A DNA stretch of 64,000 bases from Ruditapes philippinarum (GCF_026571515.1 NW_026852831.1:1-64000), one strand, 5' to 3'. Counted from the first letter of the stretch, positions 2,907-43,799 are shown. A program made the numbers and translations. Notes: generated by a model not told the origin, from the letters alone.

Positions 2907-3093
2907 ATGAAGATTCTATGTGTTTTAGTGTTATCTCTGACAACATGCGGTGTAACATGTAGTGAGTTTTGTGAAAATGACAAAGACTGTGATTGGCAAG
3001 TTCAAAGTGGATTTGACGTTTTGGATTATACATCTTTGAAACAACATGTGTGTCCGGATAGTCCGGCATGTTCGGATATTGGAAACATAACAG
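2907..3093 (+). CDS. ALK: ALK-like exon 1: signal peptide and start of degenerate MAM
   Basis: [18 protein letters not shown] hydrophobic leader, then [13 protein letters not shown] (MAM-like CxW). Donor ACAG|GTAGG, phase 1, matches exon 2. The link across the 20-kb intron is inferred. Confidence 0.75.
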
Positions 3094-42000: not shown

Positions 42001-43799
42001 TTAATACAAAAGTAAATTATATATTAGGTTATGTGATAAAAAGAGCAACTTATAATTAATTAATTACAAAATCAACGTTCTGAAAATGTGTTACATCTAT
42101 GCTTGGTTCATGTATTATTCATTTTCAGGGCATACGGTGTTTTATTGTGGGAAATATTTACGCTCGGTTACATGCCATATCCAGGACAGACAAATAGTGA
42201 CGTCATGCATTTTGTTGCTTCCGGTGGTCGCTTAGATCCTCCTGAAAAAAGTCCCGCTAGATTGTATGATTTTCTATTTAAAAATTTAGTCATTAGATTT
42301 TAAATGTATTTAATTTATTATATATTTAGTAAATTAAAATGATCCTTATAATGAAATATCTTATATAAGTGCGTTCCTCCTGATCAGATCTGTAGGATTT
42401 AAGTTGATTTAGTGTTTCTTAAATTCAAATACTTTCCCGAAACGAATATGGTTATCATTTTAAACATAATGACACTATTATTTGTATAGAATATAGTTCA
42501 ATAACACCTGAATTCTAACCGACTTACATACAGAAACAGCGCTCATTTATATGAACTTAAACAAGCCGGTGCATATCTGAATCACACATATCGCCTGTAT
42601 TTACTTTTAGCTTTCTGAAATATCTATAATTGCATTTCATTATTACCAGTGATATTGTTAGTTTAATGTACTTAATCAAAGACTGTCTTTGTTTTCTTAA
42701 TATAGGAGCAAAATAATGATCATGTGCTGGAATTCTGTGGCAGATATACGACCGTCATTTAGCGAGATTATTGATCTTCTAGACATGTGCCTTCAGGTAA
42801 TTAAGATGTTTCATTGACATTGATAGGAGTTTGCTTTCTTTTGATTTATATAAAAATGCATTTTCACCAAATGATGATAAATATGTACTTTCCACTCCTT
42901 TGTCTAAAACCTATACAAATAATACGTTTTTTGTTGATGAAAACTTGACTAAACAATTTTATTTATTTTTGTTTTACTTTGTACATTTTCAAGCATTTTA
43001 TGAACAAAAGAATATGTTATTACTTTCAATGATATAGACAATTTCTTGATCATTATTGTTTGTTTCAATCAATTAGAATATAGTGTTGTTGCTCTAATCT
43101 TTTTCAACATCAATTTGAAACATGAGCTTTTCAACATGATTATACTTCTCAAGCAAAAGTCTCGTCAATTATTAAACCATTTTCTATTCGAAACGAAACG
43201 AAATCGATTATGATCAGATTAAAAAGCCAATTGTTTTCTCGTTTAGGGTACATACATTTTATTACTAAAAGATAATACGCCGCTTTTTATAGAATGGCAA
43301 TAACGTGTCACGTTTAAAGTTCCATGATAACCGTATGAATACATCTGCGGATGTTTCAAAGTTATAAATTTTACCATTTCATGTTAAATATTGAATACGG
43401 CTTAAGTCAGTGCTAAGGGTTGTGAACGGTAACTTGCACATTCCATTACCGTCTATGGACATGCTCAAGCAAACCGAGCCTGCAACATATTCTATTGTGT
43501 TGCTTTGTGCCTACTTAAGGGGTCTATACATGTTTATGTTATCAACGATTATAACAATATCTATAACGTTTCAGGACGAGGAGGTACTAAATACAGATGT
43601 ATCGTTATTCCAGTACCCCATTAATGAATGTTTTAAGGACGCTTCCACTCTTGCTAAAAGTTCAAATACAGCAGACGACAGCGCCGATAAATCTTCTGAT
43701 AGCCAGTGTGAGGGCGCATCCGGTACGGCCGCAGAGTTCAAAGGTCATTTTGAGTCTCAAAGTCGAGAGCCGCTGCTTCTTTCCTCACCCGACTGTTGA
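2907..43799 (+). CDS. ALK: ALK/LTK-family receptor tyrosine kinase, 26 coding exons, about 1129 aa (SP-MAM(degenerate)-LDLa-MAM-LDLa-MAM-TM-TK)
   Basis: Hand-assembled exons: 2907-3093, 23270-23462, 28324-28454, 28758-28883, 29621-29779, 30207-30316, 30714-30871, 31738-31829, 32346-32453, 32914-33039, 33628-33786, 34023-34129, 34471-34631, 34865-34953, 35214-35321, 35586-35714, 37637(or 37634)-37853, 38876-38966, 40292-40356, 40691-40820, 40997-41094, 41410-41502, 41804-41905, 42129-42263, 42706-42796, 43575-43799. All introns are GT-AG with matching phases, total 3390 nt, no internal stop. Kinase motifs [57 protein letters not shown] and LGYMPYPG are ALK-diagnostic. The symbol is at family level (ALK-like); ortholog versus paralog is unresolved. 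Confidence 0.92.
5003..5150 (-). repeat. Inverted copy of the conserved element at about 15260-15406 (third copy at about 63700-63846)
   Basis: atgatcgataacatctgacgataatttgccaatatcgagaaaacatcccattagctttt is the near-exact reverse complement of aaaagctaatgggatgttttcttgatattggcaatcatcgacagatgttatcgatcat. Confidence 0.85.
9930..10965 (-). mobile_element. Non-autonomous Helentron-like (HINE / pearl-type) element with internal tandem repeats of about 180 bp
   Basis: Terminal hairpin atgcctctcttcgggggcat (10941-10960), adjacent GACA/GACG microsatellite, about 4 internal units (gtgtgac at about 10081, 10397, 10586, 10767), subterminal atgccc and hairpin gtcac-ccaa-gtgac near 9940. Absent from copy 2 (about 58115). 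Inserted in an A/T run with no TSD. Confidence 0.8.
11275..11496 (-). mobile_element. tRNA-derived SINE with 14-bp target-site duplication
   Basis: Minus strand has an A-box-like gtggtcgagggtttagag, B-box ggttcgatcccc and tail atgactgaaatactgttgg...aaacaaactaacaaa. Flanked by atattcattaaatt at 11261-11274 and 11497-11510. Absent from copy 2 (about 58755). Confidence 0.8.
14545..14686 (-). mobile_element. Old tRNA-derived SINE (predates the duplication)
   Basis: Minus strand starts gggagcggtgcccaggtggtgaagg (A-box-like). The orthologous copy at about 62186-62327 keeps the B-box ggttcgagccc. Confidence 0.6.
17474..17602 (+). mobile_element. 3' fragment of a SINE/LINE family
   Basis: ...gcgccatatgaccgaaattgtattggtgcgccgtaaaccaaacaaaacaaa tail. 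A second copy lies in opposite orientation at 50341-50472. Confidence 0.65.
23270..23462 (+). CDS. ALK: ALK-like exon 2 (degenerate MAM)
   Basis: Strong polypyrimidine acceptor ttttccttttcag|G. GNVLFLNT...LVSHLL...PCFVIRLY...EKDM. Donor AG|GTATG, phase 2. Confidence 0.8.
24270..24520 (-). mobile_element. Possible decayed RTE-clade LINE reverse-transcriptase fragment
   Basis: Minus-strand frames give [13 protein letters not shown] and VLWDLKRDIPVSKL...LFMTLMCSV, resembling the RTE 'DIxxRIxKA...W...IxxxxKxxL' segment. Frameshifted; weak support. Confidence 0.35.
25795..25954. mobile_element. Small fold-back MITE relic
   Basis: Ends tatagtgatgatagaa / ttctatcacttata. Internal arms catcaaaaacacccggcaatctaatttatacttgggcg and cgcccctcgtacaaatcagatagcctcgtgtttcgatg form an imperfect hairpin around gggcgcaacgccc. 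Confidence 0.6.
28324..28454 (+). CDS. ALK: ALK-like exon 3 (end of degenerate MAM)
   Basis: tttcag|G acceptor. RWKDLDLQF...ISIETK...[16 protein letters not shown]. Donor T|GTAAGT. Phase 2 in, phase 1 out. Confidence 0.8.
28758..28883 (+). CDS. ALK: ALK-like exon 4: LDLa domain 1
   Basis: [36 protein letters not shown], a six-Cys LDL receptor class A pattern. Phase 1-1. Confidence 0.92.
29621..31829 (+). CDS. ALK: ALK-like exons 5-8: MAM domain 2 (29621-29779, 30207-30316, 30714-30871, 31738-31829)
   Basis: [10 protein letters not shown]...[10 protein letters not shown] | GYYMYIDS...AKLQS...SCK | LRFFYHMLG...LWSKKG...EWNYAEV | RYFITIRG...[14 protein letters not shown]: complete MAM consensus. 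Confidence 0.93.
32346..32453 (+). CDS. ALK: ALK-like exon 9: two-Cys linker 1
   Basis: tttag|GT acceptor, [17 protein letters not shown]...TLFCKSDQ, G|GTACAT donor. 108 nt, phase 1-1, paralogous to exon 15. Confidence 0.8.
32914..33039 (+). CDS. ALK: ALK-like exon 10: LDLa domain 2
   Basis: [36 protein letters not shown], six-Cys LDLa. 126 nt, the same size as exon 4. Confidence 0.92.
33628..34953 (+). CDS. ALK: ALK-like exons 11-14: MAM domain 3 (33628-33786, 34023-34129, 34471-34631, 34865-34953)
   Basis: [10 protein letters not shown]...[10 protein letters not shown] | GQYVYIDG...ATLHS...QCK | FRFFYHMYG...LWSQHNG...VWVYDEI | [10 protein letters not shown]...[14 protein letters not shown]. 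Confidence 0.93.
35214..35321 (+). CDS. ALK: ALK-like exon 15: two-Cys linker 2
   Basis: tttttgtcttcag|GT acceptor, [12 protein letters not shown]...[16 protein letters not shown]|GTAATA donor. 108 nt. Confidence 0.8.
35586..35714 (+). CDS. ALK: ALK-like exon 16: transmembrane segment
   Basis: [25 protein letters not shown] hydrophobic stretch, G|GTAAG donor. The next exon supplies the stop-transfer RRRK. Confidence 0.9.
37637..37853 (+). CDS. ALK: ALK-like exon 17: juxtamembrane region
   Basis: AIRRRKS...TELNPNYDF...[16 protein letters not shown] and LxEIPR are ALK juxtamembrane hallmarks. Tandem AAGCAG acceptor (37634 or 37637), donor AA|GTATG. Confidence 0.9.
38876..42796 (+). CDS. ALK: ALK-like exons 18-25: tyrosine kinase domain
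   Basis: Exons of 91, 65, 130, 98, 93, 102, 135 and 91 nt encode [12 protein letters not shown]...VAVK | [22 protein letters not shown] | [13 protein letters not shown]...ELLDGGDL | ...HFVH | [10 protein letters not shown]...[12 protein letters not shown] | [35 protein letters not shown] | [19 protein letters not shown]...GGRLDPP | ...CW...RPSF. All catalytic residues are present. Confidence 0.97.
43575..43799 (+). CDS. ALK: ALK-like exon 26: short C-terminal tail
   Basis: tttcag|GAC acceptor, phase 0 after CLQ|GTAATT. DEEVLNT (compare ALK DPDVINT) through ...[11 protein letters not shown]. Confidence 0.85.
   Translation, partial: DEEVLNTDVSLFQYPINECFKDASTLAKSSNTADDSADKSSDSQCEGASGTAAEFKGHFESQSREPLLLSSPDC

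What the first reader, a model, noticed from the sequence alone, without database searches (positions are those of the whole stretch)
2907..43799. ALK-family receptor without the canonical ligand-binding region, carrying MAM-LDLa-MAM-LDLa-MAM instead
Seen in sequence: the spliced ectodomain is SP, degenerate MAM, LDLa, MAM, 36-aa linker, LDLa, MAM, 36-aa linker, then directly the TM exon. The two introns between MAM3 and the TM exon are each only about 260 nt and AT-rich with no Gly-codon runs, so no glycine-rich exons can hide there. Established: vertebrate ALK and Drosophila Alk are MAM-LDLa-MAM followed by a glycine-rich (TNF-like + poly-Gly) region, and in vertebrate ALK/LTK this membrane-proximal region with its EGF-like module binds ALKAL ligands. 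Inference: an intact ALK kinase is wired to a different, all-MAM/LDLa sensor, so it would need a different ligand or activation mode (for example MAM-mediated homophilic adhesion or dimerisation). It may be an undescribed lineage-specific ALK paralog class. I cannot search databases to confirm novelty.
Basis: partly seen in the sequence, partly recalled or inferred. Interest (0 to 1): 0.88.

Follow-up and report, generated by a model that had tools for sequence, protein, structure and literature searches.

The report
Clam ALK receptor lacking its ligand-binding domain
This is the Manila clam's only ALK-type receptor kinase, and, like its counterparts in six related clams and mussels, it has lost the glycine-rich ligand-binding domain that every other known ALK/LTK keeps, leaving an intact kinase attached only to MAM and LDLa domains.

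Summary
A 26-exon, all GT-AG gene (2907-43799, + strand) encodes 1129 aa. Every exon matches Ruditapes philippinarum XP_060566739.1 (P0014) exactly; NCBI names that protein [quoted passage not shown].

The architecture is signal peptide, divergent MAM1, LDLa, MAM2, 36-aa linker, LDLa, MAM3, 36-aa linker, short stalk, TM, NPNY juxtamembrane segment, and an ALK-type kinase with all catalytic residues. Spliced contigs from three sequencing studies join MAM3 to the linker, TM and juxtamembrane exons with nothing in between.

The "paralog class" idea is not supported. The kinase nests within mollusc ALKs, and no second ALK-like kinase turned up in the 1.41-Gb assembly. The nearest kinase found there is a ROS1-like gene.

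Orthologues in Mactra, Mya, Dreissena, Potamilus and two transcript assemblies also lack the domain. They have 63-92 aa between the MAM domain and the TM, against 405-426 aa in Solemya, Mytilus and the oyster. The loss therefore probably dates to the heteroconch bivalve stem. The second LDLa-MAM cassette was found only in the two venerid species.

How the receptor is activated is unknown; a homodimer prediction gave no verdict. I rate it a new variant of a known kind. It is annotated automatically, but I found no paper describing it.

The parts
2907..3093 (+). Exon 1: start codon, signal peptide, start of divergent MAM1
   Evidence: identical to P0014 residues 1-62; MAM1 homology
23270..23462 (+). 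Exon 2: middle of MAM1, after the 20.2-kb intron 1
   Evidence: confident beta strands in the model
28324..28454 (+). Exon 3: end of MAM1
28758..28883 (+). Exon 4: LDLa 1, first exon of cassette 1
   Evidence: Pfam PF00057, E 2.8e-8
29621..29779 (+). Exon 5: MAM2 part a
   Evidence: Pfam PF00629, E 3.8e-6, profile positions 1-39
30207..30316 (+). Exon 6: MAM2 part b
   Evidence: inside MAM 221-384 of P0014
30714..30871 (+). Exon 7: MAM2 part c
   Evidence: Pfam PF00629, E 1.5e-5, profile positions 75-124
31738..31829 (+). Exon 8: MAM2 part d, ending in SPECFG
   Evidence: Pfam PF00629, E 0.12, profile positions 132-157
32346..32453 (+). Exon 9: 36-aa two-cysteine linker 1, last exon of cassette 1
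   Evidence: spliced joint 32453>32914 in three runs
32914..33039 (+). Exon 10: LDLa 2, first exon of cassette 2
   Evidence: Pfam PF00057, E 3.7e-7; joints
33628..33786 (+). Exon 11: MAM3 part a; acceptor corrected to 33628
   Evidence: Pfam PF00629, E 5.1e-7; joint 33039>33628
34023..34129 (+). Exon 12: MAM3 part b
   Evidence: Joints
34471..34631 (+). Exon 13: MAM3 part c
   Evidence: Pfam PF00629, E 5.7e-8
34865..34953 (+). Exon 14: MAM3 part d, ending in SPECFG
   Evidence: Pfam PF00629, E 0.067; joint 34953>35214
35214..35321 (+). Exon 15: 36-aa two-cysteine linker 2
   Evidence: Joints 34953>35214 and 35321>35586; the EF...YC motif is shared by all heteroconch orthologues
35586..35714 (+). 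Exon 16: Ser/Thr stalk and transmembrane helix (P0014 residues 693-713)
   Evidence: Hydropathy; helix 690-720 in the model; joint 35714>37637
37637..37853 (+). Exon 17: juxtamembrane segment with the ALK-type NPNY motif
   Evidence: Human ALK is the only PDB match, and a weak one, E 0.49; 82% identical to the Mactra orthologue; the only match in the genome
38876..38966 (+). Exon 18: kinase glycine loop and VAVK lysine (K817)
   Evidence: Pfam PF07714; near-invariant columns
40292..40356 (+). Exon 19: kinase alpha-C helix (E834)
40691..40820 (+). Exon 20: kinase N-lobe and hinge
   Evidence: Pfam E 3.1e-9; ALK is the best PDB match, 46.1 bits against 43.4 for ROS1
40997..41094 (+). Exon 21: kinase, up to the HR of the HRD motif
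41410..41502 (+). Exon 22: catalytic loop DIAARN and the DFG motif
   Evidence: D916, N921, D937-G939
41804..41905 (+). Exon 23: activation loop tyrosines (Y945, Y949, Y950) and P+1 loop
42129..42263 (+). Exon 24: kinase C-lobe
   Evidence: ALK 60.6 bits against ROS1 49.8 bits in the PDB
42706..42796 (+). Exon 25: end of the kinase domain
43575..43799 (+). Exon 26: C-terminal tail and stop codon
   Evidence: 80% identical to the other venerid

Best explanation
[quoted passage not shown] It keeps the N-terminal MAM1-LDLa-MAM2 part of an ALK ectodomain, the ALK juxtamembrane NPNY motif, and a kinase with every catalytic and activation-loop residue. It lacks the whole TNF-like/glycine-rich/EGF-like block that lies between MAM2 and the membrane in other ALK/LTK receptors. 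Six further orthologues share the same gap (Mactra, Mya, Dreissena, Potamilus, and two transcript assemblies of unnamed origin, one of them in a cluster with a Mercenaria protein). In the two venerid species a six-exon LDLa-MAM-linker cassette was duplicated in tandem, which gives MAM-LDLa-MAM-LDLa-MAM. All cassette borders are phase 1, so duplication or deletion of such exons keeps the frame.

Inferred: the block was lost once, in the stem of heteroconch bivalves. The receptor still works as a kinase: the kinase is 96% identical between the two venerids while the ectodomain is only 33-63% identical, and the gene is transcribed and correctly spliced in several studies. Its activity must therefore be set through the MAM/LDLa ectodomain. 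My rough odds for how: a soluble or cell-surface ligand that binds MAM/LDLa, about 45%; self-association or adhesion through the MAM domains, about 25%; control mainly by expression level, shedding or a co-receptor, about 30%. The confidence given is for the identity, the domain loss and a still-working kinase, not for any one activation mode.
For: Gene model and identity to XP_060566739.1. Domains. Spliced contigs from three studies join MAM3, linker, TM and juxtamembrane exons directly.

ALK affinity of the kinase: PDB searches; the best 120 database relatives are almost all ALK/LTK receptors by name or domain content.

Trees: heteroconch clade 100/99, Bivalvia 96/86, Mollusca 100/99. A position outside lophotrochozoan ALKs is rejected at p 0.0003.

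No second ALK-like kinase in the genome; the nearest kinase found, on contig C5120, carries FN3 repeats like ROS1.

Gap size: 63-92 aa with 2-8% Gly in seven heteroconch proteins, against 405-426 aa with 17-18% Gly in Solemya, Mytilus and Magallana. The canonical TNF-like start motif and the pre-TM EGF-like cysteines are absent.

A search with the Solemya glycine-rich region finds bivalve, arthropod, chordate and other ALKs, but no heteroconch species among the best 120.

Catalytic residues. Domain-wise conservation. Timing of the duplication. RefSeq isoforms are 1129 and 1130 aa only.
Against: The kinase data alone do not fix the attachment point inside Mollusca. A tree with all canonical mollusc ALKs as one clade excluding the heteroconch receptors is not rejected (p-AU 0.092), so an early mollusc duplication followed by reciprocal losses remains possible.

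The searches of this genome for glycine-rich-domain exons have low sensitivity and no positive control. only sees proteins of 721-2294 aa, so a separate small protein carrying that domain could have been missed.

Four of the seven gap-bearing proteins are unverified gene models. No ligand, binding or kinase activity was tested. The homodimer prediction gave no verdict. The runs that hold spliced contigs are RNA only by the tool's guess, although GT..AG-bounded skips argue for cDNA.
Confidence: 0.8

Rival explanations
1. It is a paralog. An ALK gene was duplicated early in molluscs or bivalves. One copy lost the glycine-rich domain and survives only in heteroconchs, while the canonical copy survives only in the other molluscs.
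For: The AU test does not reject canonical mollusc ALKs forming a clade without the heteroconch receptors (p 0.092). ALK duplicates do occur in other lophotrochozoans: Owenia has two genes on contigs of identical recorded length, probably one contig.
Against: No species or 38 has both forms. This genome shows only one ALK-like kinase. The best tree places the clade where orthologues should sit. The scenario needs one duplication plus at least two complementary losses, against a single domain loss.
Confidence: 0.1
2. The missing domain is an artefact: glycine-rich exons exist but were lost through misassembly, or are used only in isoforms that were not sampled.
For: The assembly is fragmented, with 15,874 contigs. 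Introns 1, 2 and 16 are long (20.2, 4.9 and 1.9 kb). Only part of the transcript was checked with reads.
Against: The introns between MAM3 and the TM exon are 260 and 264 nt and are full of stop codons. Spliced contigs from three studies, one of them 3943 nt long, join these exons directly. RefSeq lists only 1129- and 1130-aa isoforms. Intronless transcript contigs and gene models from six other species have the same gap. Intron 16 lies on the cytoplasmic side of the TM exon.
Confidence: 0.03
3. It is a decaying or signalling-dead receptor: a leftover that no longer responds to anything, or that acts only as an adhesion or scavenger molecule, as the NCBI name (MAM and LDL-receptor class A domain-containing protein) would suggest.
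For: The ligand-binding block is gone and the ectodomain evolves fast, at 33-63% identity between the two venerids. No ligand is known.
Against: The 26-exon frame is intact. K817, E834, HRD, DFG and the three activation-loop tyrosines are all present. The kinase is 96% and the tail 80% identical between the venerids. The architecture is retained in species spanning Unionida to Venerida. The gene is transcribed.
Confidence: 0.07

Closest known systems
Canonical invertebrate ALK (Drosophila Alk, C. elegans SCD-2; here the ALKs of Solemya velum, Mytilus edulis, Magallana gigas and Argopecten irradians)
   Same: Same kinase clade, with 62-68% identity over the juxtamembrane-plus-kinase region. Same NPNY juxtamembrane motif, the same YxxxYY activation loop, and the same N-terminal order MAM1-LDLa-MAM2 with the ALK-type LDLa motif.
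   Different: Canonical ALKs have 405-426 aa with 17-18% Gly between MAM2 and the TM: a TNF-like/glycine-rich domain (PF12810) and an EGF-like module. This receptor has a 36-aa linker and a short stalk, 63 aa in all. The venerid species add a second LDLa-MAM cassette.
Mammalian LTK
   Same: A natural ALK-family receptor that has lost a large part of the ancestral ectodomain while keeping the kinase.
   Different: It is the mirror image. By the review PMC10605310, mammalian LTK lost MAM-LDLa-MAM and kept the TNF-like/glycine-rich/EGF-like part that binds ALKAL ligands. The clam receptor kept MAM-LDLa-MAM and lost that part.
MAM-domain adhesion and oligomerisation proteins (receptor phosphatase mu, meprins), from general knowledge
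   Same: Membrane proteins whose MAM domains mediate homophilic contact or oligomerisation. This is a possible model for how the clam receptor could be clustered.
   Different: There is no descent relation beyond the MAM fold, and they have a different catalytic part or none. Self-association of the clam ectodomain was not supported or refuted here.
MALRD1 / apical endosomal glycoprotein, the family NCBI names this protein after
   Same: Alternating MAM and LDLa domains; these proteins are the next-best full-length hits to the ectodomain.
   Different: By the Pfam content listed, those proteins are MAM/LDLa arrays without a kinase domain. This one has a TM helix and an ALK kinase, so the database name is misleading.

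Membership tests
ALK/LTK receptor tyrosine kinases | The kinase domain groups with ALK/LTK rather than ROS1, insulin receptor or other tyrosine kinases | tested here: met
   ALK is the best PDB match for both kinase exons searched, E20 and E24. The top 120 relatives are almost all ALK/LTK by name or domain content. The gene is nested in mollusc ALKs. A position outside Lophotrochozoa is rejected, p 0.0003.
ALK/LTK receptor tyrosine kinases | Juxtamembrane NPNY motif and the YxxxYY activation loop, with intact catalytic residues | tested here: met
   Exon 17 aligns only to the human ALK juxtamembrane segment around NPNY, weakly at E 0.49. N760, P761, Y763, K817, E834, H914-D916, D937-G939, Y945, Y949 and Y950 all sit in near-invariant columns.
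ALK/LTK receptor tyrosine kinases | N-terminal MAM-LDLa-MAM module (present in ALK, absent in mammalian LTK) | tested here: met
   Pfam LDLa and MAM. The N-terminal domain is homologous to canonical ALK MAM1 at E 2.4e-13 and is modelled as a beta domain.
ALK/LTK receptor tyrosine kinases | TNF-like/glycine-rich domain (Pfam PF12810) between MAM2 and the membrane | tested here: not met
   No PF12810 in P0014 or in six orthologues. Only 63 aa with 3% Gly separate MAM3 from the TM. Transcripts join the exons directly.
ALK/LTK receptor tyrosine kinases | Membrane-proximal EGF-like module | tested here: not met
   The cysteine pattern seen before the TM in Solemya, Mytilus and Magallana has no counterpart here. 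The clam has a Ser/Thr-rich stalk instead.
ALK/LTK receptor tyrosine kinases | Activation by ALKAL (vertebrates) or by Jeb/HEN-1 (protostomes) | not testable with these tools
MALRD1-like MAM/LDLa array proteins (the NCBI name) | MAM/LDLa array protein without a kinase | tested here: not met
   A TM helix and a full PK_Tyr_Ser-Thr domain, E 1.4e-88, are present.
ROS1/Sevenless | Ectodomain of FN3 repeats and a ROS1-type kinase | tested here: not met
   No FN3 domain in this gene. The genome's ROS1-like gene, with FN3 exons, lies on another contig, C5120.

The most novel reading that the evidence does not exclude
The MAM-LDLa-MAM module of ALK is a ligand-binding or activation unit in its own right, for example for a Jeb-type LDLa ligand or an unknown partner. 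Ancestral ALK would then have had two separable sensors. Heteroconch bivalves kept only the N-terminal one, and venerid clams enlarged it, whereas mammalian LTK kept only the membrane-proximal one.
Probability: 0.3. Interest if true: 0.8.

Novelty: new variant of a known kind. Interest (0 to 1): 0.6.

Why it matters
The TNF-like/glycine-rich/EGF-like region is the part of the ectodomain shared by ALK and LTK, and it is the part that binds the vertebrate ALKAL ligands. The role of the MAM and LDLa domains is still unclear (review PMC10605310). Here a whole bivalve lineage has kept a conserved, expressed ALK kinase with only the MAM/LDLa part. By the accepted view that Unionida and the heterodont clams together form Heteroconchia, which is general knowledge, this arrangement would be several hundred million years old. 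It is a natural deletion experiment, and it makes a direct question testable: what can MAM-LDLa-MAM do alone, and which ligand, if any, does it see? It also corrects a misleading database name. Finally, it shows how phase-1 exon cassettes allowed both an in-frame loss and an in-frame duplication in a single receptor.

Tried and rejected
- **Pfam PF12810 against this genome:** no candidates, but there is no positive control. Mollusc glycine-rich domains score only 53-68 bits over about 230 aa. Single exons would therefore be invisible, and I treat the result as uninformative.
- **Whole canonical ALKs against this genome (Solemya, Mytilus):** only 35-37 of 377-555 candidates were scored, and none fell in the glycine-rich range. 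The result is consistent with absence but weak.
- **A kinase-less MAM+glycine-rich transcript protein (P0155):** all 30 candidates were scored and none fell in residues 515-749. The query is only about 35% identical to bivalve domains.
- **Single-exon Pfam and my own MAM profile on the N-terminal domain:** not significant. Direct profile-to-MAM comparison was weak (P 0.0037). The question was settled through canonical ALK MAM1.
- **My first acceptor for exon 11 (33640):** wrong. Transcripts and P0014 give 33628.
- **AU test holding all other ALKs together (p 0.067):** it only moves the distant outgroup, so it says nothing about paralogy.
- **Homodimer prediction for residues 19-425:** no verdict, neither for nor against self-association.
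- **The look-up of encoding contigs:** I therefore could not read the transcript contigs of relatives or cut out a glycine-rich-only query.
- **Jeb/HEN-1:** no tool gave a sequence, so co-loss or retention of the ligand was not tested.
- **Literature:** no paper in the library describes an ALK without the glycine-rich domain in bivalves, or maps which Alk domain binds Jeb.
- **Rfam on intron 16:** no hit.

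
Full report
**The gene**

The window has about 30% GC. On the + strand, open frames between 2907 and 43799 link through GT..AG introns into one continuous frame of 26 exons.

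I searched the exons one at a time, by reference. A search with the juxtamembrane exon (collected) led to a Mactra protein. From there I reached P0014, which is XP_060566739.1 of Ruditapes philippinarum, 1129 aa. NCBI names it [quoted passage not shown].

All 26 exon peptides match P0014 exactly and in order, with 0 mismatches in 1109 residues. P0014 is therefore this gene's product, and I used it for whole-protein work. Isoform X1 differs by one residue. My first choice of acceptor for exon 11 (33640) was wrong; 33628 is correct.

**Domains**

- Pfam finds LDLa in exons 4 and 10, MAM in exons 5-8 and 11-14, and tyrosine kinase from exon 18.
- On P0014, Pfam gives MAM (3 stretches), LDLa (2) and kinase, and no PF12810.
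- The N-terminal 150 residues get no significant MAM hit on their own.
- A profile of that region from seven heteroconch proteins aligns over 156 columns with the MAM1 region of canonical ALKs (E 2.4e-13). That MAM1 profile in turn matches MAM at E 3.4e-24.
- The AlphaFold model shows this region as a confident all-beta domain.

The kinase has the VAVK lysine, the alpha-C glutamate, HRD, DFG and the YxxxYY activation loop, and the juxtamembrane segment has the NPNY motif.

**No glycine-rich region**

- MAM3 ends at residue 634-636, by Pfam and by the exon border, and the TM helix starts at 693. The 63 residues between are 3% Gly.
- The two introns there are 260 and 264 nt, with 25-27% GC, and carry 4-11 stops in every frame.
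- Contigs from three runs of the same organism, from three different studies, carry GT..AG-bounded skips that match introns 9-12 and 14-16.
- One 3943-nt contig holds exons 9 to 17 with exactly the expected lengths, so nothing is inserted between MAM3 and the TM exon.

**Which kinase**

- In the PDB, human ALK is the best match for both kinase exons searched: 60.6 against 49.8 bits for ROS1 with exon 24, and 46.1 against 43.4 bits with exon 20. ALK is also the only match for the juxtamembrane exon, weakly at E 0.49.
- In the 5.8-billion-protein collection, the best 120 relatives of the juxtamembrane-plus-kinase region are almost all ALK/LTK receptors by name or domain content.
- A careful tree of 48 kinases recovers Mollusca (100/99) and Bivalvia (96/86). 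It also recovers a clade of seven receptors without the glycine-rich domain (100/99), sister to the canonical ALKs of Solemya and the pteriomorphs.
- Forcing the clade outside lophotrochozoan ALKs costs 48 log-likelihood units (p-AU 0.0003).
- Its exact attachment inside Mollusca is not fixed (p 0.092 for the alternative).
- A third test only relocated the distant outgroup and is uninformative.

**One ALK per genome**

In the 1.41-Gb assembly the juxtamembrane exon matches only itself. The next-best match to the kinase exons, at 62% and 49% identity, lies on contig C5120. That gene has FN3 repeats and a ROS1-type kinase. Whole Solemya and Mytilus ALKs find no other locus above 54% identity, and nothing in their glycine-rich ranges. 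The same is true for a kinase-less MAM+glycine-rich protein. These genome searches have limited sensitivity, and the Pfam search is uninformative.

**A lineage-wide loss**

| Species / source | Length (aa) | Residues between MAM and TM |
|---|---|---|
| Mactra antiquata | 886 | 65 |
| Mya arenaria (named "ALK-like protein") | 838 | 85 |
| Dreissena polymorpha | 776 | 92 |
| Potamilus streckersoni | 933 | 90 |
| Transcript assembly P0034 | 820 | 81 |
| Transcript assembly P0013 (clusters with a Mercenaria fragment) | 1133 | 65 |
| Ruditapes philippinarum (this gene) | 1129 | 63 |

Sources.

- All seven share a linker motif after SPECFG that canonical ALKs lack.
- Solemya, Mytilus and Magallana have 405-426 residues there at 17-18% Gly. 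These include the TNF-like start motif and the EGF-like cysteines.
- A search with the Solemya glycine-rich region finds it across Bilateria, including Argopecten, Mytilus and Magallana near the top. No heteroconch species is among the best 120.
- Because Potamilus (Unionida) shares the gap, one loss in the heteroconch stem is the simplest reading.

**The extra cassette**

Exons 4-9 and 10-15 have the same lengths to within a few bases and identical phases, and they are 45% identical as protein. Only this gene and the other venerid have two cassettes. In a module tree the two venerid cassettes group together, with Mactra as sister (95/94), and the second cassettes pair across the two species (100/97). 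The duplication is therefore younger than the domain loss. Every cassette border is phase 1, as are both borders of the TM exon, which allows in-frame loss or gain.

**How it may work**

Between the two venerids the kinase is 96% identical, the tail 80% and the juxtamembrane segment 79%, while the ectodomain domains are 33-63% identical. This pattern points to a working kinase attached to a fast-evolving sensor.

How that sensor is read is inference only. The options are a ligand for MAM/LDLa, MAM-driven clustering, or control by expression level or shedding. A homodimer prediction gave no verdict.

**Known or new**

The protein is in RefSeq under a misleading name, and the Mya one is called "ALK-like". 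In the paper library I found no description of an ALK without the glycine-rich domain. The review PMC10605310 describes that region as the part shared by ALK and LTK, and the N-terminal module as the variable part. The clam receptor is the reverse case. I rate it a new variant of a known kind.

Noticed in passing
window 54227-63997 compared with 5456-15555: About 10 kb downstream of the gene is collinear with part of intron 1, at 74-91% identity in ten blocks. No copies of exons 1-4 lie downstream. The window ends inside the copy.
   Followed up: partly
window 36028-36420 (intron 16): A repeat with depth up to about 39,000 in the runs that were laid. Thousands of raw RNA reads 'go back 253' with about 31 other letters between, as a tandem or circular high-copy element would. 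It occurs once in the window and has no Rfam match.
   Followed up: partly
G000:C5120, about 14.5-98 kb, minus strand (loci L017-L026): The nearest kinase found is a ROS1/Sevenless-like receptor with FN3-repeat exons. The same contig carries a minisatellite with a 53-nt period at 2563-4596.
   Followed up: partly
G000:C10430:173700-187000: A single open frame of 3559 aa holds more than 15 MAM(-LDLa) repeats without interruption. It looks like a giant, apparently intron-poor MAM-array gene.
   Followed up: no
G000:C8340:253634-254563 and G000:C5773:62922-63803: Whole tyrosine-kinase domains lie in single open frames of 562 aa and about 400-445 aa. They are 39-42% identical to mollusc ALK kinases. 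They are possibly intronless genes or retrocopies of another kinase family.
   Followed up: no
proteins P0040, P0037, P0039: The N-terminus of bivalve ALK varies in other ways too: Argopecten ALK has an SRCR domain where MAM1 would be. The annelid Owenia has two ALK-like genes on contigs of identical recorded length, probably the same contig, and one of them has no Pfam glycine-rich hit.
   Followed up: no
proteins P0045, P0086, P0078: Several arthropod ALK/LTK proteins have no precomputed PF12810 hit, yet they match the Solemya glycine-rich region at E 1e-31 to 1e-39. A missing Pfam hit alone therefore does not show loss of the domain.
   Followed up: partly
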